From the IMG/VR virus record IMGVR_UViG_3300032294_002797, positions 159,303 through 223,302 of that record: DNA of 64,000 nt; one strand, given 5' to 3'. Under the pieces are notes generated by a model, which was given only the letters and a program-made list of their open reading frames with translations, was not told the DNA's origin and ran no database searches. Positions within the stretch are counted from its first letter, which is position 1; each line of letters opens with the position of its first letter. This document shows, one piece after another, positions 6,041-46,335 of this stretch. Position numbers and translations under genes: made by a program.

Positions 6041-8955
6041 AAGGAGTATTCTGTAACTATTTGAGGAATATCTTTTCTTAATCCGGTAAATGTCCAAAAG
6101 AAATCATATAGTCCATTAGTATCACAACCAACAGTAAACGTATTGTGTGGTATCTTAATGTCTTGTATATAAAGAATCTTATTGTGTTTATAGTTAGTAA
6201 TTTGTATATTAATACTATCGTCATCCAAAACTAAATCTTTAATATAGTCTGGTAAATTTACTACACAAACTCCATTTACAACAGTATCTTTTCCTGTTAA
6301 TCGTACTCCGTGATATGGGCTTTCTAATGAGCCGTATTCTAAAACATATCCAGGTTTTGATGGATGGCTTATTTTAAAGCTTTTAGTTGTAGCAGAAAAG
6401 GCTCCCGATACTGCCACATCTCCTACTACATCTAGTTTAACGGCTGGATTATTTTTACCAATTCCTACATTTCCTATATTATCTATTCTTAATCTTTCGG
6501 TGCCGCTAGTACTAATAGACAAGGTATTGGCTGATGGAGAAAATAAGCCTGTATCTGGATCATTGATAAATTCGAATGATGGTAAAGAAGAGGTACCCGA
6601 TCCTGCTATAAATGATCCTGTACAACTAACGTCTCCATTAAATGTACTGTTTCCAACTACATGAAATTTAGTTGAGGGTACTCCTGTTCCTATTCCAATA
6701 TTGCCGCCACTAGAAATCACAAAATCATTTTGATTAAATCTTCCTCCAATTATACTATCGTCACTAAATACTTCAAATATTGGCAAACCAGCATTATTAT
6801 TAACGCTCATTAAGCTACCGCTAAGACTGTCTACAACGCTGAATAGACTACCATTAGTACCTTCAACATTAAATACCAATTCTCCGCTAGTAGTAGAATA
6901 AACGTCTAATAAAGCATTAGGGACTAATCCAGTGGTTGAGGCAAATAATCCTGTTCCCACAACATGTAAACGTCCACTAGGAGCTGTTGTTCCTACTCCT
7001 AAATTACCAACCGACGTTAATCTCATTCTTTCGGTAGCAGCCGGAGAAAATCTGATATGTTGGTTAGCCGTTCCTGCATTATAACTATTTCCTATTTCAA
7101 CCTCTTGACTAAATGCTAAAACTCTTATTCTTCCAGCTTGACCTTCTAAATTAATTGTATTATCTCCACCCCTAACTATTAAACTATCACTAGTATCATT
7201 ATATAACCTATTATATGTTAGCGGTACTGCCGTACCTGATCGTGATATGTATAAAGAACCTTGAGAATAAGAATCTCCAAAAATATGTAAAAGACCACTT
7301 GGCGTTAATGTATTTATCCCAACAGCTCCAGCAAAATAGGCTCCTCCAGACGCATTAATATTAGAAAACATTATAGACCCATCTGCATTTCTGGTTTCTA
7401 TAGCGTTAGCAGTTTGACTGGCTACCTGTGATATGTAGATTCCTCTTCGACTAGGAATAACTGTGCTTACCTCCAATGAGGCGAGTCCGTTCCATGTTGT
7501 TTTAGAAACAGCTAATGTTGTATTATTAATAAATCCAGTTGAACCAAAAGATAAAAATCTTGTACCGCTTCCTTGACTAACATAAAAAGCATTCACGCTG
7601 TCTGTTCTAACATCTAAATCAAACGTTGGATTATTAGTGCCTATTCCTATTCTAGATGATACTATCCCGGTACCCAAAACATGTAGTTGTCCACTTGGTG
7701 TTGATGTTCCTATGCCAAAACTACCAGACGGTGTAATTCTAGCTTTTTCGCTACCGCCGGGATTAAACATAACATAAGCATTAGCAAATGCTGATCCTAT
7801 TTCGACTCCAACGCTTGATGATGACAGAACAAGTTTACCTCCATCTCCTTGTAGCTGTAAAGAATTACTTCCTCCAGCTAAAGTAAGATTTTGAGCACCA
7901 GCTCTTTGAATACTGCATCTATTTCTACTAGTGTCGGCGTAGTCTGTATCGTTTTGATTAAAATATAAAATTCCTTGAATTCTAGATTCTCCATTAATAT
8001 CCAAAACAGAGGATGGAGCAACCCGATTAACGGCTATGCCTGAAGAAAATATTCCCGTTCCTATAACATGTAATTGGCTACTAGGACTAGTTGTTCCTAT
8101 GCCCATATGTCCATTATTTCTGTTTATATGCAAAACATCAGACCAGCTTGTAGATCCTGCTCTGCGAGCAAGTCTAAGATTACCGTCAGTTGCTCTATCA
8201 AAAAATCCCCATCCATTATTTCCACTAGACAATTGAATATTATTGGTACTAGCTAAGAATGGAACTGAATCGTTATTGCCGACTCCGATGTGGGTCTTTA
8301 CTACATTGCTTGGATTACTTAAGAGTACGTAGCTATTATTAGCTACAATTCTTTCTATATGAAGTGCCCCGCTAGGATTAGTCGTTCCTATACCAACACT
8401 AGTATCATTATCAAAAATAACTCCACTAGTTAAACTATTACTTCCATTCCATCGTGAAACATAACCACTAATTCCAATTCCGGTAGTTAAATTAGCTGGA
8501 AATAGTCCACTTACGCTAGAGTTAAAATTAGTAATATTTGATGACGTATGAGTATGGCCGCTGACACTAATAGGAATATTGTTTAATAACCATGGTCCGC
8601 TAAAATTTAAAACTTCGTCGCCTTCGCTTGCTTCTATCGAGCCAGAAACATTATTACCATTAAAATATATTCTATGTATTCCATTAGAATTTATGGCTGG
8701 ATTTATTTCTATTCCACCTTCATAATAAGAAGGAGCATAAATCGATAAATTTTGAAATTGACCACTAGCTGGAGATATCAAACCAGAGGAACTAGCAACA
8801 TTTTTTAAACTATTCCAATTAGATACTCCGTCACCAATCTTTAAAATATTATTGGATAGATCATATCCTGGCTCTCCACTAGCTAGTATAGGATTGGTAC
8901 TGCTCCACTGAGATCCTGTTCCTTTTCGTATTGTAATGGCCGTATTAACTGGCAT
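6037..8955 (-). CDS. long tail fibre, Mtd_N-like N-terminus, GIGTTxP repeats
   Basis: IRKGTGSQWSSTNPILASGEPGYD..LKIGDG; repeated GNxGIGT motifs; C-terminal KSFKISHP..LESP domain. Confidence 0.85.
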   Translation of the reverse strand: MPVNTAITIRKGTGSQWSSTNPILASGEPGYDLSNNILKIGDGVSNWNSLKNVASSSGLISPASGQFQNLSIYAPSYYEGGIEINPAINSNGIHRIYFNGNNVSGSIEASEGDEVLNFSGPWLLNNIPISVSGHTHTSSNITNFNSSVSGLFPANLTTGIGISGYVSRWNGSNSLTSGVIFDNDTSVGIGTTNPSGALHIERIVANNSYVLLSNPSNVVKTHIGVGNNDSVPFLASTNNIQLSSGNNGWGFFDRATDGNLRLARRAGSTSWSDVLHINRNNGHMGIGTTSPSSQLHVIGTGIFSSGIAVNRVAPSSVLDINGESRIQGILYFNQNDTDYADTSRNRCSIQRAGAQNLTLAGGSNSLQLQGDGGKLVLSSSSVGVEIGSAFANAYVMFNPGGSEKARITPSGSFGIGTSTPSGQLHVLGTGIVSSRIGIGTNNPTFDLDVRTDSVNAFYVSQGSGTRFLSFGSTGFINNTTLAVSKTTWNGLASLEVSTVIPSRRGIYISQVASQTANAIETRNADGSIMFSNINASGGAYFAGAVGINTLTPSGLLHIFGDSYSQGSLYISRSGTAVPLTYNRLYNDTSDSLIVRGGDNTINLEGQAGRIRVLAFSQEVEIGNSYNAGTANQHIRFSPAATERMRLTSVGNLGVGTTAPSGRLHVVGTGLFASTTGLVPNALLDVYSTTSGELVFNVEGTNGSLFSVVDSLSGSLMSVNNNAGLPIFEVFSDDSIIGGRFNQNDFVISSGGNIGIGTGVPSTKFHVVGNSTFNGDVSCTGSFIAGSGTSSLPSFEFINDPDTGLFSPSANTLSISTSGTERLRIDNIGNVGIGKNNPAVKLDVVGDVAVSGAFSATTKSFKISHPSKPGYVLEYGSLESPYHGVRLTGKDTVVNGVCVVNLPDYIKDLVLDDDSINIQITNYKHNKILYIQDIKIPHNTFTVGCDTNGLYDFFWTFTGLRKDIPQIVTEYSL

Positions 8956-34608: not shown

Positions 34609-37272
34609 TTAAATTATCGAATTACCAATCAACTCTTTAAACTTATCAACATTATCAAACTTTGTTGACCAAGAACTTTTCTTGCTATAGTAACTATTAC
34701 TAGAACCAAAACTGAGAGGATTAGTTGAACGAAGTTCACGCAAATCGCCTCGACACTCTTGGCTACACACAATATACTTCAACATCGGCTGTTTGTCAAG
34801 AGCCTCTTTAATACTATTACGCAACTCATCGACTTTCGGCAGTTTATCTTTGAGCGAATAATCTGGCTTGATAAGTTTGGTCATAGATTCTTGCTCATTA
34901 GAACTACCATACAATGTAGCAACCCATCGAATGAGACTATTATAGAGAATATTATTCTGACGAATATCTTTACTATTGATTCCATTCAGCCCAATATTGT
35001 GCAACAGTTTCGTGATATGGGTAAAATAATCAACAGCCTTAAACTTTTGAATATCAAATGATGGTCTATAAATAGTGTCAGCAAAGAATTCAAGAGTCAT
35101 ACACTGATCCATTAGAGATACAAGTTGCTGATCTTTAATGTATTGACCATATTCCAGTCCAAGTAGGTTTAGAACATGAAACATAAACTGCTTATCAATA
35201 CTACCATAGTTATAGTAATTGTAATCACTACCTTTCTGGACTTTATTGTATTCAGACCTAGCGTGTTCTGTAAGACCATTATATTCGGCTAAATCCTTAA
35301 ACTTATTCTCATACAGTTTCTCTAGTCTTTCCTTAAAGAACTTATTGAAACTAATAAGGTTATAGCCCTTCTTGATTAGATCATTAGCATAACTGCTCTT
35401 TATCGCAAAGATTTTAGTATCTCCGAAAAGTTCAGTAGCAAGTGTGCTGTCCTGCTCTTTAATAAAGAGATTCAGATCATGAATACCAGGAAATCCTTCA
35501 ACAGAAGCATATCGCAAGATAGGAATGTATACGATCTCATCCTGTTCAAGAACATCGTCTCTTTCTTCCTGATCCTTAATTTCAAGAAGATACTGAGCAT
35601 CGTTCATAAGATTATCGCTTACGATAGCCCCAGCACTCTTAATCTTACCATGAATCAAGAATAGACTATCCTTACTGACAGAACCAAGAGGATCAACAGT
35701 GCGACCCTTCTTTGAAGGACTACTCAAAAGACTCTTAAAATCCGAGACCTTAAGGAGTTTATCTTCTCCCCCAATATCAGAAATAATCTTTTCAAAACCC
35801 TCAGACGAATCTTCTGGATGGTCGCTGTCGATAAAAAGATAGGCATAGCAATCGTTCTGATTACAATACTTTGTAACAATCTTCTTGGCAGACTCTTCTC
35901 CCTTAACGTCACAAACAAAGAACGCCATAGGATTACTTTTACGATTATTCTGCCAGTAATACTGACCCTTGCCATTCAATGTTTCGGAGTGAATCTTATC
36001 TGTAAGATAAACCATCCTACGAGAACGGTATCCAGAGGTTCTAAAGTTAAAGACGTACAGATTCTTACTCTTTTTAAGAGTGTACTCTAGGTCTTTTCCA
36101 GACTGCAATTCATGAACCTTATTATTAGTATCCGTCCATGATGCTCCCGCAGTCCAGCCACCAGCAAGATCACTAAGATTATAGTATGTTTGATAAGCCT
36201 CAACCAAACTCTTGGCGGTTGACAACTTATTGCTCATATCCTGCTTAAGTTCAAGATAGATTTCTTGAGTACGATCACGCAGAGTCTTGATAACATTTTT
36301 AGTATACTGCAAACCCTCGCGGCTTACATCCATCTCAAGTTCACCAATACCAAATTGGATCTCAAGATATAATCCGGCATTAAGAATCTCTCTGACTAGA
36401 CTCTTCCAATTATCAACGTCGGCTTTACCAAAAGCCCTATTCCACTTTTGAATATGGTCTGGTTGATCGGGCCTATCTTCGCCCACAATTTTACTAGAGT
36501 CTACTGGATACGCAATATTACCCATGATAGCAACAACACCACTACCGGGACTATTATGACCACTAGGATATTTGGTGTGTTCATTACTAACTCGTCCAAT
36601 CTTCCAACCCTTACCTTCGATCACAACATTGTGATGAGAATACGAGCCATCATTAATCGATGAACAAACACCACCATTGATAATAGGCTTAAGTTTGAAA
36701 TAATGGAAAATTCTCTTTGCCTTAGCAGTAAACTCATGAAAGTCATACTGCTTAACAGCAAAACTAATTTCTAGTCCATTCGGTTCCTTGGTATCTGTGA
36801 CACTAACCAAATTCAAACTAGGAACACCGCTTTCATCCATAGCCGCGATATAAGATAGTTTCTTACCATCATAATAAGAAATAGTGCTAAAACTCTTGGT
36901 ATAAGCAAAAGGACTCTTACTACCAAGACCAAGACAACCAACAAAATCATTGCTATCATTCTTGTTAGATGCCCCGTATGTTGTATACAATTCCTCCATA
37001 TCGGTCTGACTAAGACCAGTACCAAAATCTCTAACAGTAAAAGAGGGATTGGTTTGTGTGGGGAGAGTTACCCTAAAAGGGTTTTGATTTTTTGCAGCAA
37101 TATGGGCGTCATAAGCATTTGTGCTAAGTTCACGAATAACCGCCATAACCTTATCGGAATAAAGAGAATCCGAAAGGATCTTAAACATTTTGCTGGTTTG
37201 TGCGATACTAAACTGATTAGCCGACTGAATACCAACCGAATGAATCTCAACCGTCCTGTCTGCCAACTTCAT
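34609..37272 (-). CDS. rIIA: rIIA-like protein (GHKL ATPase N-terminus)
   Basis: LYSDK..RELSTNAYDAH, DFGTGL, GCLGLGSKSPFAY, SREGLQY; directly upstream of rIIB. Confidence 0.9.
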   Translation of the reverse strand: MKLADRTVEIHSVGIQSANQFSIAQTSKMFKILSDSLYSDKVMAVIRELSTNAYDAHIAAKNQNPFRVTLPTQTNPSFTVRDFGTGLSQTDMEELYTTYGASNKNDSNDFVGCLGLGSKSPFAYTKSFSTISYYDGKKLSYIAAMDESGVPSLNLVSVTDTKEPNGLEISFAVKQYDFHEFTAKAKRIFHYFKLKPIINGGVCSSINDGSYSHHNVVIEGKGWKIGRVSNEHTKYPSGHNSPGSGVVAIMGNIAYPVDSSKIVGEDRPDQPDHIQKWNRAFGKADVDNWKSLVREILNAGLYLEIQFGIGELEMDVSREGLQYTKNVIKTLRDRTQEIYLELKQDMSNKLSTAKSLVEAYQTYYNLSDLAGGWTAGASWTDTNNKVHELQSGKDLEYTLKKSKNLYVFNFRTSGYRSRRMVYLTDKIHSETLNGKGQYYWQNNRKSNPMAFFVCDVKGEESAKKIVTKYCNQNDCYAYLFIDSDHPEDSSEGFEKIISDIGGEDKLLKVSDFKSLLSSPSKKGRTVDPLGSVSKDSLFLIHGKIKSAGAIVSDNLMNDAQYLLEIKDQEERDDVLEQDEIVYIPILRYASVEGFPGIHDLNLFIKEQDSTLATELFGDTKIFAIKSSYANDLIKKGYNLISFNKFFKERLEKLYENKFKDLAEYNGLTEHARSEYNKVQKGSDYNYYNYGSIDKQFMFHVLNLLGLEYGQYIKDQQLVSLMDQCMTLEFFADTIYRPSFDIQKFKAVDYFTHITKLLHNIGLNGINSKDIRQNNILYNSLIRWVATLYGSSNEQESMTKLIKPDYSLKDKLPKVDELRNSIKEALDKQPMLKYIVCSQECRGDLRELRSTNPLSFGSSNSYYSKKSSWSTKFDNVDKFKELIGNSII

Positions 37273-39715: not shown

Positions 39716-39989
39716 TAGGGGCTATCGGATTCGAACCGATACTGTACGGATTTTCTTACTACTATAACTTTCGTTACCATTTCTGTTTGTAGTCTGGACT
39801 TTACCTTAACCATAGTTTTCACTTTAGGTTCCTGCCGTCAAGTCTCTACACCTTCATATTTCTATGCTTGGCTCGGTATTGCCATTTTACAGGTTTCACC
39901 GAATTTGACAAGTTCTACTTTAAAGATTTCTCTCTAAGCACTCCAATTTAACTAAAAGTCCGATGACTCTGCCGTTGGTCTAAGCCCCC
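39716..39989 (-). tRNA. tRNA-Leu(UAA), short variable loop, intron-split (exons 39989-39956 and 39754-39716)
   Basis: Spliced 73-mer folds: GGGGGCT/AGCCCCT acceptor, anticodon loop CT-TAA-AA, ATCGG-TTCGAAT-CCGAT T-arm; no encoded CCA. Confidence 0.9.
39755..39955 (-). mobile_element. group I intron (IC3-like), 201 nt, no ORF
   Basis: P AAATTCGGTGAAA, Q AATACCGAGC, R GTAGAGACTTGACGG, S AAGGTAAAGTCC, terminal G; P1 ACTT/GAGT with U.G at the splice site. Confidence 0.9.
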
Positions 39990-40074
39990 ATAATAACCCT
40001 GACTACACAAACCACTGATTTGAGGTTGACTAATGTTGTGCCTCTATCATATCTGTGTAGCCAGAGTTTATTAT
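39990..40074 (-). ncRNA. long rod-like hairpin, candidate ncRNA
   Basis: ATAATAA/TTATTAT plus CTCTGGCTACACAGAT/GTTTGTGTAGTCAGGG with several G.U pairs; inner GAGG/CCTC. Confidence 0.5.
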
Positions 40075-40093
40075 AAGTTGAAATTTACAAAAA

Positions 40094-40375
40094 TCAACCG
40101 TTGCTGTGAGCCTTGAGGCGACGAACAATGTCGGCCATAGCCTCAACATTATCAACCGTCTTAATGGGCTTCGCACGTTCCATAGTGGGCAGTTCAATAC
40201 CCTTCTTAGAAAGAGCGGCCTTGGTACGAGCAAAACGAGCCATCGTACTAGCAACCTTCTGACCAGTCTTTGACGCAATTTCGGCATACGTCTTAGACGA
40301 AAAAACAGCCTCAAGAAACTGCTCGTCACTGCAACGAACTCTTGTCTGCTTATCAACCGTAGTAACTTCAGCCAT
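40094..40375 (-). CDS. small basic HTH-like DNA-binding protein (start probably 40375)
   Basis: SKTYAEIASKTGQKVASTMARF; GGAGG RBS; own promoter. Confidence 0.65.
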   Translation of the reverse strand: MAEVTTVDKQTRVRCSDEQFLEAVFSSKTYAEIASKTGQKVASTMARFARTKAALSKKGIELPTMERAKPIKTVDNVEAMADIVRRLKAHSNG

Positions 40376-40450
40376 AATCAACCTCCAAATCATTTTCCAA
40401 ACTTGTTGAGCAAGTCGATCACGCGACCGAATCCTTGCATCAACTCACCC

Positions 40451-40479
40451 ATTCTACAACACTGTATCGGCACTGTCAA
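40451..40479 (-). promoter_or_regulatory. sigma70-like promoter
   Basis: TTGACA-GTGCCGATACAGTGTTG-TAGAAT. Confidence 0.8.
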
Positions 40480-40523
40480 TAGGCTTCCTTGAAAAATTTT
40501 CCGCACCTGACCAATTTTTAGAG

Positions 40524-45972: not shown

Positions 45973-45979
45973 AATATAA

Positions 45980-46335
45980 TGGAGGCGGCGGGGTACTGCC
46001 CCCCGCGTCTTGTTATATTGTCCACAATATTTTCTACAAGTTTATTTTGTTCATAAATTTTAAACAAGATTAAAGAGCAAACAACATTCATCTTGTCGTA
46101 CCAACTAGTCTCAGGCTAGAACCCGTTGGCTATTCTAGCAGCCGAAGGATTTTACGACAATCTTTTGAACGCTACCTTCATCGCTTTCTAAGATTGTTAC
46201 TGCTTTTTATTAAGCAGCAAGGGCTAACTGAGTATTGCCAGTTAAAGCACTTGATATGATGATTAAAGAGGCCAACATATCATCCTCTACTTGCTTATAT
46301 GGTTTCTAATATTCAATCGATTCTAATTCGCCCCC
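45980..46335 (-). ncRNA. ssrA: tmRNA; tag (A)GNTQLALAA at 46239-46210
   Basis: GGGGGCG/CGCCTCC-A acceptor with G3.U70; TTAACT upstream of the resume codon; tag ends LAA-stop; 356 nt. Confidence 0.92.

What the first reader, a model, noticed from the sequence alone, without database searches (positions are those of the whole stretch)
39990..40074. 85-nt rod-shaped hairpin abutting the 5' end of the intron-containing tRNA
Seen: about 23 bp of outer helix containing multiple G.U pairs (which favours RNA-level structure on the minus strand), internal loops and an inner GAGG/CCTC stem. Its 3' end is the nucleotide just before tRNA G1. It has no U-tract and no SRP GGAA motif. Inference: RNase P cleavage of the tRNA would release it with a precise 3' end as a stable small RNA, or it is an RNase III site or protein sponge.
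Basis: partly seen in the sequence, partly recalled or inferred. Interest (0 to 1): 0.6.

Follow-up and report, generated by a model that had tools for sequence, protein, structure and literature searches.

The report
Phage 3'UTR hairpin carrying an anti-RBS
The 85-nt hairpin is a real, conserved RNA structure, but it belongs to the small early gene upstream rather than to the tRNA: its tip carries a sequence complementary to that gene's own ribosome-binding site, so it probably shuts off translation of its own mRNA.

Summary
The hairpin at 40074..39990 (minus strand) is real. It folds at -33 kcal/mol (z = -6.6), and the sense strand folds better than the antisense.

It is conserved in more than 70 distinct sequences from uncultured T4-like phages. 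In these, 94.9% of cells are paired, 18 of 23 pairs show compensatory changes, and G.U pairs outnumber A.C mismatches 229 to 12. It is therefore a sense-strand RNA structure. No Rfam family matches it, and the window holds only one copy.

It always follows one small, highly conserved helix-turn-helix gene (40375..40094) that is driven by a conserved early promoter. A tRNA with anticodon UAA usually follows 5-8 nt later, but four variants lack the tRNA and have a U-run instead.

The new result is that the conserved apical strand, consensus (CAUAA)UCAACCUC-AAAUCAUU, is antisense to that gene's own 5'UTR, Shine-Dalgarno and start codon. A median of 18 of 20 positions pair, up to 13 perfect Watson-Crick pairs occur, and there are compensatory substitutions and one compensated indel.

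The best model is a 3'UTR stabiliser hairpin that presents an anti-RBS. RNase P (or termination) makes the 3' end, and pairing with the RBS represses translation, as in S. aureus icaR. No function has been tested.

The parts
40451..40479 (-). Early sigma-70-type promoter of the small gene: TTGACA-N17-TAGAAT, preceded by an A-rich tract.
   Evidence: scores it 11 of 12. One search shows the -35 box, the spacer motif GCCGATA and the -10 box conserved in 61 distinct upstream regions.
40405..40444 (-). Stem-loop at the 5' end of the 5'UTR.
   Evidence: Predicted. The alignment shows compensatory changes, for example GGTCGCGTGACC, GATCGCGTGATC, AATCGCTTGATT and GGTTGCGTAACC.
40375..40392 (-). Target of the hairpin apex: 5'UTR, SD and start region UGAUUU(G)GAGGUUGAUUA. 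GGAGG is at 40386..40382 and AUG at 40375..40373.
   Evidence: There are 17 pairs with 40032..40016, including one G.U, plus one bulged G. The duplex energy is -20.2 kcal/mol.
40094..40375 (-). Small early gene of 93 aa. The predicted fold is a three-helix HTH plus a C-terminal helix. It is very conserved: 682 clusters, all named hypothetical.
   Evidence: weak Sigma70_r4_2 match; pLDDT 80.5; only weak matches, all to HTH DNA-binding domains.
39990..40074 (-). The hairpin, a 3'UTR element. Outer-stem arms are 40074..40051 and 40012..39990. The conserved 17-bp core is about 40066..40051 with 40012..39997.
   Evidence: 82.8 bits on the sense strand, 25 on the antisense, single copy in the window; 71 distinct sequences, 94.9% paired, 18 of 23 pairs with double changes.
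40041..40053 (-). 5' interior strand GAUAUGAUAGAGG, an imperfect copy ('mimic') of the RBS region. It pairs locally with part of the anti-RBS strand (UGAU/AUCA and GAGG/CCUC).
40016..40032 (-). Anti-RBS strand UAGUCAACCUCAAAUCA. It comprises the 3' part of the loop and the 3' strands of the apical and middle stems. The invariant UCAACCUC is at 40029..40022.
39716..39989 (-). tRNA with anticodon UAA and a short variable loop, interrupted by a group I intron (39955..39755) between U34 and A35. No CCA is encoded.
   Evidence: RF00028, 56.3 bits, with P1 placing the U.G pair after CUU; the spliced form is called tRNA-Leu(taa); homologous introns in canonical tRNA-Leu(UAA) genes of other phages.
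40070..40097 (-). Promoter-like TTGATT-N16-TATAAT that overlaps the stop codon and the base of the hairpin. It is specific to the window and L025.
   Evidence: scores it 10 of 12. It is not conserved in relatives.

Best explanation
The hairpin is the structured 3'UTR of a small, strongly expressed early gene of an uncultured T4-like jumbo phage.

The proposed sequence of events is as follows.
1. Transcripts start at the conserved early promoter. They run through a 5' stem-loop, a strong RBS, the 93-codon ORF and the hairpin, and usually on into a tRNA(UAA).
2. The RNA 3' end is made a few nucleotides after the hairpin. RNase P does this by cutting at tRNA +1; where the tRNA is missing, termination at a U-run does it.
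3. The 17-23-bp outer helix then protects the mRNA from 3' exonucleases.
4. The apex carries a roughly 20-nt strand antisense to the gene's own 5'UTR, Shine-Dalgarno and AUG. Half of this strand is exposed in the loop. The other half is held by an imperfect internal copy of the RBS.
5. The antisense strand pairs with the real RBS, either within the same molecule or from processed 3' fragments acting on other copies. This blocks ribosome binding and probably creates a duplex that RNase III can cut. The amount or duration of synthesis of the HTH protein is thereby limited.

Shown: the structure, its conservation, its strand, its fixed association with the gene, the complementarity and its covariation, and the favourable energetics.

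Inferred: the transcript ends, cleavage by RNase P and RNase III, and the repression itself.
For: 1. The fold is real and better on the sense strand.
2. The family comprises 71 distinct sequences. 94.9% of cells are paired against 85.2% in shuffles (0 of 500 reach the observed value). 18 of 23 pairs show compensatory double changes, and sliding the partner columns drops pairing below 43%.
3. G.U pairs outnumber A.C mismatches 229 to 12.
4. A motif scan that made no use of the gene (filtered with model R1) found the element only directly after this gene.
5. The window holds one copy.
6. The invariant loop/stem octamer UCAACCUC is the exact complement of the RBS GAGGUUGA. In the window the only other minus-strand GAGGTTGA lies about 33 kb away, at 7097-7104.
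7. The longest perfect complement to the RBS region is 13 nt in 15 distinct loci, 12 nt in 10 and 11 nt in 6.
8. In a 20-position helix model a median of 18 positions pair. Cognate pairing (78.3%) exceeds every one of 1000 partner shuffles (75.2 +/- 0.55%).
9. Compensatory changes: L057 and L309 have RBS GAGGUUUAUUAU with apex AUAAUAAACCUC. L328 has 5'UTR GAUUGGAGG with apex CCUCCAAUC, a compensated indel.
10. In the long-range helix G.U pairs outnumber A.C mismatches 68 to 20.
11. In the window, opening the anti-RBS costs +8.3 kcal/mol and the duplex with the RBS gives -20.2.
12. The promoter and 5'UTR are conserved.
13. The tRNA-less variants have U-runs after the stem.
14. A precedent exists: in icaR, a 3'UTR anti-SD motif pairs with the SD, blocks initiation and creates an RNase III substrate (PMC3868564). 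The hbs mRNA has a 14-bp 5'/3'-UTR interaction (PMC5737220).
Against: - There are no expression or RNA-end data. The phage is uncultured and has no relative among 50,697 deposited phage genomes.
- RBS-to-apex pairing crosses the outer stem, so it is a kissing interaction. Standard folding cannot evaluate it, and its topology is untested.
- SD-like and anti-SD-like sequences pair trivially. The apex also resembles a 16S rRNA 3' end.
- Sliding 24-nt windows against the whole apex find a second site near the 3' end of the ORF with similar energy in many loci.
- The complementarity is weak in L310 (two uncompensated mismatches, -11 kcal/mol) and nearly lost in the L058/L385 lineage (z about 0).
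- The excess of cognate pairing over shuffles is small in absolute terms, and relatedness among the sequences inflates such tests.
- The RBS varies in few lineages, so independent compensatory events are few (about 3).
Confidence: 0.55

Rival explanations
1. The hairpin is a plain 3' end element. It acts as an intrinsic terminator or attenuator and as an exonuclease block for the upstream mRNA, and the complementarity to the RBS has no function.
For: - An A-rich tract, a long stem and a U/A-rich tail are present in all variants.
- The four tRNA-less variants have true U-runs directly after the stem.
- The element always sits at the gene's 3' end.
Against: - Terminator and stabiliser hairpins do not need conserved loops. 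Here the unpaired loop bases (A/U)UCAA are near-invariant while the stem drifts and covaries.
- Those loop bases match the RBS and covary with it.
- In 67 of 71 loci a tRNA follows within 5-8 nt with no room for a promoter. In some relatives (e.g. L040) no promoter-like sequence is evident before the next gene either. Transcription must therefore read through the hairpin.
Confidence: 0.2
2. The hairpin is a tRNA 5'-leader element: an RNase III processing site, or a stable leader-derived small RNA or sponge released by RNase P, acting on targets other than its own mRNA.
For: - The conserved coaxial helix of 17 bp or more, plus the interior stems, is long enough for RNase III.
- The tRNA follows directly.
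- External transcribed spacers of tRNA operons can act as RNA sponges (my own knowledge: 3'ETS-leuZ in E. coli).
Against: - The hairpin persists without any tRNA in 4 distinct loci.
- The same tRNA plus intron exists without the hairpin in L003.
- Homologues of the gene at 49% identity have the tRNA but no hairpin.
- No other complementary target lies nearby. The one other minus-strand GAGGTTGA, at 7097-7104, was not examined.
- No 5' end for a separate small RNA can be inferred.
Confidence: 0.15
3. The feature acts at the DNA level. The RBS region and the apex would be inverted repeats flanking the gene, serving as an operator pair for the HTH protein or as the ends of a mobile cassette. The hairpin arms would be a palindromic protein-binding site.
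For: - The gene encodes an HTH protein.
- The region downstream is a hotspot of mobile DNA: a group I intron and HNH-like ORFs.
Against: - The strong excess of G.U over A.C, 229 to 12 locally and 68 to 20 long-range, is expected for RNA pairing on one strand and not for duplex DNA sites.
- The covariance model scores 82.8 bits on the sense strand and 25 bits on the antisense.
- Stem sequences drift freely while pairing is kept.
- The gene sits in conserved synteny and is single-copy.
Confidence: 0.05

Closest known systems
icaR mRNA 5'UTR-3'UTR interaction in Staphylococcus aureus (PMC3868564)
   Same: An anti-SD sequence in the 3'UTR of an mRNA encoding a small transcription factor pairs with the SD region of the same mRNA. 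In icaR this blocks initiation and creates an RNase III substrate.
   Different: - There is no sequence relationship. The icaR motif is UCCCCUG in a 3'UTR of more than 100 nt.
- Here the antisense stretch is about 20 nt, reaches the AUG, and is displayed at the tip of a long covarying hairpin together with an internal RBS mimic.
- A tRNA follows it.
- The host is a phage.
- Function is untested.
B. subtilis hbs mRNA 5'/3'-UTR interaction (PMC5737220)
   Same: A long-range (14 bp) pairing between the UTRs of a short, highly expressed mRNA for a small DNA-binding protein. It modulates ribonuclease access.
   Different: In hbs the pairing protects the leader from RNase Y and does not occlude the SD. 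There is no hairpin presentation and no tRNA.
Phage lambda sib retroregulation of int (my own knowledge)
   Same: A hairpin downstream of a phage gene controls that gene's expression from the 3' side. It overlaps a terminator, and its effect depends on how the 3' end is made.
   Different: sib acts only as an RNase III entry site for 3'-to-5' decay. It has no complementarity to the RBS.
T4 early-transcript RBS sequestration (genes e, soc, 49, I-TevI; my own knowledge, review PMC3014915 listed but not read)
   Same: A T4-type phage uses RNA secondary structure that covers the RBS to control translation.
   Different: In T4 the inhibitory strand lies just upstream of the RBS, and late promoters remove it. 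Here the inhibitory strand lies about 350 nt downstream, in the 3'UTR.
Intrinsic (Rho-independent) terminators
   Same: A stem followed by a U-rich tail at the end of a gene. The tRNA-less variants look like functional terminators.
   Different: This element is 85 nt, branched by internal loops, and has a conserved loop sequence. In most loci the tail is a poor U-tract (3-5 U in 8), and essential downstream RNA (the tRNA) must be read through it.

Membership tests
Any Rfam 15 family | A covariance-model match at the gathering score, or at least E < 1. | tested here: not met
   (gathering thresholds, whole window) found only the tmRNA and the group I intron. (E up to 1 and 10) found nothing over 39990-40074. 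The only nearby match is a chance-level ROSE_3 hit (14.6 bits, E = 2.2) over the 5'UTR.
Intrinsic terminator | A G+C-rich stem with a short loop, followed immediately by a run of U. | tested here: inconclusive
   The consensus scan did not call it. The tail has 2-6 U in the first 8 nt in tRNA-linked loci (mean U fraction 0.48). It has 6-7 U in the tRNA-less L032 and L065, and the tRNA-less L006 and L017 also carry a U-run after the stem. The hairpin is 85 nt with a 15-nt loop.
icaR-type 3'UTR anti-SD element (a mechanism class, not a sequence family) | The 3'UTR contains a sequence complementary to the SD region of the same mRNA. | tested here: met
   There are 8-13 perfect pairs, a median of 18 of 20 positions paired, and compensatory changes in L057, L309 and L328.
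icaR-type 3'UTR anti-SD element (a mechanism class, not a sequence family) | The pairing lowers translation and yields an RNase III substrate. | not testable with these tools
   This needs reporter, toeprint and RNase III assays.
RNase III processing site | About two turns (20 bp or more) of near-continuous double-stranded RNA, cleaved by RNase III. | tested here: inconclusive
   The conserved helix is 17 bp (23 bp in the window), followed by internal loops. Cleavage cannot be tested.
tRNA 5'-leader-specific element | Co-occurs with the tRNA and is absent without it. | tested here: not met
   Four distinct loci have the hairpin but no tRNA. L003 and L181-L184 have the tRNA but no hairpin.
Dispersed repeat (PeSL- or REP-like intergenic hairpin) | Many copies per genome. 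| tested here: not met
   Model R1 with filters off finds one copy in 64 kb; the next best hit scores 12.9 bits. Every related locus has one copy. The remaining 159 kb of the contig was not available.

The most novel reading that the evidence does not exclude
This would be a phage 'self-limiting early gene' module. tRNA processing by RNase P (or termination) releases an mRNA whose 3'-terminal hairpin then folds back, or acts in trans as a stable 3'UTR-derived small RNA, onto its own ribosome-binding site. Translation of a host-takeover transcription factor would then be confined to a short window after infection. The internal RBS mimic would act as the setting of the switch. This would be the first conserved, covariation-supported 5'-3' UTR translational switch in a virus of bacteria, and the first coupled to tRNA maturation.
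Probability: 0.25. Interest if true: 0.75.

Novelty: new variant of a known kind. Interest (0 to 1): 0.62.

Why it matters
[quoted passage not shown] This element would add the following.
- It would be a whole family, with more than 70 sequence variants in abundant uncultured freshwater-type T4-like phages.
- It already has natural compensatory mutations.
- It has a simple, clonable architecture of about 500 nt: promoter, 5'UTR, 93-codon ORF, hairpin and tRNA.

These features make it a convenient system for testing how long-range anti-RBS pairing, RNase P and RNase III processing, and mRNA stabilisation are combined. It also flags a very conserved early HTH protein, and its persistent linkage to an unusual tRNA(UAA), as likely important for infection. 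If the complementarity proves to have no function, what remains is an ordinary, though unusually large and well-conserved, 3' stabiliser or attenuator hairpin.

Tried and rejected
- ARAGORN on the raw window finds no tRNA because of the intron. The tRNA was recovered only after in-silico splicing.
- The repeat finder missed the hairpin because the exact seeds are shorter than 9 nt.
- No close phage genome or protein homologue exists in the deposited-phage collection. Only the intron matches there.
- My query was one base out of frame. It still retrieved homologous loci, and the correct frame (40375) was used afterwards.
- The metagenome scan with a 14-base coding pattern was almost all noise: 2 true hits in 120.
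- Scanning the whole upstream RNA with 24-nt windows against the full 45-nt apex did not discriminate. A second site in the ORF scored similarly, so position-specific pair counts were used instead.
- The middle stem of the hairpin is only 67-75% paired and its register is uncertain.
- The window's internal promoter-like site TTGATT-N16-TATAAT is not conserved.
- I considered and dropped the following:
  - a Cas12a-repeat-like RNA anti-CRISPR (only a UGUAG resemblance);
  - a T-box or specifier element;
  - a RegB site (the motif is GAGG, not GGAG);
  - a boxA/boxB or put antiterminator;
  - a small ORF in the loop.
- The protein fold search gave only weak, generic HTH matches (E > 0.1). The PDB sequence search gave nothing significant.
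- Complex prediction was not used, because no protein-protein claim is made.

Full report
**Observation**

On the minus strand, 40074..39990 reads AUAAUAAACUCUGGCUACACAGAUAUGAUAGAGGCACAACAUUAGUCAACCUCAAAUCAGUGGUUUGUGUAGUCAGGGUUAUUAU. It folds into a rod of 7 A-U pairs, a bulged A and 16 further pairs that include 4 G.U. Inside are internal loops, a UGAU/AUCA stem, and a GAGG/CCUC stem capped by a 15-nt loop. The MFE is -33.0 kcal/mol against -13.9 +/- 2.9 for shuffles (z = -6.6). The complementary strand reaches only -25.7. The description and the coordinates are correct.

**Surroundings**

The window is part of a 223-kb viral contig (L004). Nearly all its genes are on the minus strand, and it has an rIIA homologue and T4-type tail-fibre and ligase genes. 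It is therefore an uncultured T4-like jumbo phage. It has no close relative among 50,697 deposited phage genomes.

Directly 3' of the hairpin lies a tRNA interrupted by a group I intron (RF00028, 56.3 bits).
- The P1 alignment and the 7-nt anticodon loop place the splice sites after U34 (39956) and before A35 (39754).
- The spliced RNA is called tRNA-Leu(UAA) by ARAGORN.
- G1 is 39989 and the discriminator A is 39716.
- Homologous introns sit in canonical long-arm tRNA-Leu(UAA) genes of other huge phages. The window's tRNA has a short variable loop.

Directly 5' of the hairpin is a 93-codon ORF, 40375..40094. It has a strong RBS (uuGGAGGUUGAUUAUG), a structured 5'UTR and a TTGACA-N17-TAGAAT promoter.

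**Conservation of the hairpin**

Relatives of the ORF in IMG/VR were fetched; the query was one base out of frame but retrieved homologous DNA. All of them carry the hairpin between the stop codon and a tRNA.
- A 24-sequence alignment gave a consensus structure with compensatory changes and was used to build a covariance model (R1).
- The model finds a single copy in the window: 82.8 bits on the sense strand, 25 bits on the antisense, and 12.9 bits for the next best hit.
- Further scans, filtered with R1, raised the family to 71 distinct sequences.
- On these, 94.9% of cells pair (85.2 +/- 0.4% in shuffles, 0 of 500 reaching the observed value), and 18 of 23 pairs show changes on both sides. 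Sliding the partner columns drops pairing to 27-42%.
- Even the near-invariant CUACA/UGUAG box covaries in some lineages (U-A to C-G, C-G to U-A).
- G.U pairs outnumber A.C mismatches 229 to 12. The structure is therefore selected in the sense-strand RNA, not in duplex DNA.
- No Rfam family matches.

**Which gene it belongs to**

The apex-motif scan made no use of the gene, yet every true hit lay right after the same small gene. Downstream of the hairpin the 71 distinct loci differ:

| What follows the hairpin | Distinct loci |
|---|---|
| Intron-less, short-arm tRNA(UAA) | 30 |
| Intron-containing tRNA | 28 |
| Intron-less, long-arm tRNA-Leu(UAA) | 9 |
| No tRNA | 4 |

- In tRNA-less loci the stem is followed by a U-run and a converging HNH-like ORF (seen in L006, L017, L032 and L065).
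- Conversely, another phage (L003) has the same tRNA and intron directly behind a promoter, with no hairpin.
- Homologues of the gene at 49% identity have a tRNA-Leu(UAA) right after the stop, with no hairpin.
- In relatives, 5-8 unpaired U/A-rich nucleotides separate the conserved 17-bp stem from tRNA +1. Only in the window and L025 does an extra A-U helix extend the stem to the tRNA.

The hairpin is therefore a 3' element of the small gene, and the tRNA is a frequent neighbour.

**The new finding**

The outer stem drifts, but the apex is conserved in sequence, including unpaired loop bases.
- The invariant octamer UCAACCUC (40029..40022) is the exact complement of GAGGUUGA in the gene's own RBS (40385..40378). 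In the window the only other minus-strand GAGGTTGA lies about 33 kb away, at 7097-7104.
- The complementarity extends on both sides. The consensus apex strand (CAUAA)UCAACCUC-AAAUCAUU pairs with AAUGAUUU(G)GAGGUUGA(UUAUG), leaving one bulged G and covering the SD and the start codon.
- In the window there are 17 pairs (one G.U) between 40392..40375 and 40032..40016.
- Across the 71 distinct loci the longest perfect Watson-Crick run is 13 nt in 15 loci, 12 nt in 10 and 11 nt in 6.
- In a fixed 20-position model a median of 18 positions pair. Per-position pairing is 97-100% for the four bases after GAGG and 66-96% elsewhere.
- Cognate RBS and apex pairs fit better than any of 1000 partner shuffles (78.3% against 75.2 +/- 0.55%).
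- Natural compensatory changes exist. L057 and L309 have RBS GAGGUUUAUUAU with apex AUAAUAAACCUC. L328 has lost a U in the 5'UTR and an A in the apex, and has gained the C that pairs the otherwise bulged G.
- G.U pairs exceed A.C mismatches 68 to 20 in this helix too.
- The 5' interior strand of the hairpin (AAAUGnUUGAGG) is an imperfect copy of the RBS region. It holds part of the antisense strand locally.
- In the window, freeing the antisense strand costs 8.3 kcal/mol and the duplex with the RBS yields -20.2.

There are exceptions. L310 has two uncompensated mismatches. The L058/L385 lineage has a different apex with only an 8-nt match just 5' of the SD.

**Transcription unit**

The promoter (A-rich tract, TTGACA, spacer GCCGATA, TAnAAT) and a covarying 5'UTR stem-loop are conserved in 61 distinct upstream regions.
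- The TTGATT-N16-TATAAT site that overlaps the hairpin base in the window is not conserved.
- There is no room for a promoter between the hairpin and the tRNA.
- The tRNA must therefore be made by read-through. The mRNA 3' end would be produced by RNase P, or by termination where a U-run replaces the tRNA. This step is inferred.

**The regulated gene**

The protein is 82-100% identical across the 120 best-scoring of 682 clusters, all named hypothetical.
- It has a weak Sigma70_r4_2 match.
- Its model shows a three-helix HTH plus a C-terminal helix (pLDDT 80.5).
- It has only weak structural matches, all to HTH DNA-binding domains, and no significant PDB sequence match.
- It is most likely an early DNA-binding regulator.

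**Interpretation**

The best-supported model is a 3'UTR hairpin with two roles.
- It is a stable terminal helix that defines and protects the mRNA 3' end.
- It presents an anti-RBS strand that pairs with the gene's own RBS, in cis or in trans, to repress translation and possibly trigger RNase III cleavage.

This is the logic shown experimentally for icaR (PMC3868564), and it resembles the hbs 5'/3'-UTR contact (PMC5737220).

The rivals are a plain terminator or stabiliser, a tRNA-leader RNase III site or small-RNA sponge, and a DNA-level repeat or operator. Each is weighed in the report sections. None of them explains the conserved, RBS-matched loop as well. No experiment exists, however, and the number of independent compensatory events is small.

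**Verdict**

It is misattributed, because the element belongs to the upstream gene. The element is an undescribed RNA motif family that most likely works like a known but rare mechanism.

Noticed in passing
window 45977-46335 (-): A phage-encoded tmRNA. Rfam RF00023 matches at 100 bits over the full model, but ARAGORN did not call it.
   Followed up: no
window 39716-39989 (-); loci L024-L061 and others: The tRNA has anticodon UAA and a group I intron at the classical U34/A35 tRNA-Leu site, but a short variable loop (a type I body). At the same locus, relatives carry short-arm or canonical long-arm tRNA(UAA), with or without the intron: 30 intron-less short-arm, 28 intron-containing, 9 intron-less long-arm and 4 with no tRNA. 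The amino-acid identity of the short-arm form is unclear.
   Followed up: partly
window 40405-40444 (-): A conserved stem-loop at the very 5' end of the small gene's 5'UTR. Its apical stem shows compensatory changes among relatives. It may be a 5' stabiliser.
   Followed up: partly
window 40451-40500 (-): The early promoter is unusually conserved beyond its hexamers, in 61 distinct sequences. It has an A-rich upstream tract followed by TTCAAG, and the spacer motif GCCGATA.
   Followed up: partly
L181-L184 (metagenome contigs): Homologues of the small HTH gene at 49% identity, in a more AT-rich phage, are still followed immediately by a tRNA-Leu(UAA), with no hairpin and a weak SD. The linkage between the gene and the tRNA is older than the hairpin.
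   Followed up: partly
L003 5290-5400; L006, L017, L032, L065 downstream of the hairpin; L056, L061 downstream of the tRNA: Ends of converging ORFs with a CxxCH motif, which look like HNH endonucleases, abut the tRNA or the hairpin. Together with the intron, this marks the site as a hotspot for mobile elements.
   Followed up: no
window 40070-40097 (-): A good sigma-70-like promoter, TTGATT-N16-TATAAT, overlaps the stop codon and the 5' base of the hairpin. It is seen only in the window and L025. If it is active, its transcripts would start inside the 5' arm and lack the complete hairpin.
   Followed up: partly
window 34612-37272 (-): An rIIA homologue (phrog_612, E = 1.9e-109). Together with the tail-fibre and ligase genes, it places the contig among the T4-like phages.
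   Followed up: no
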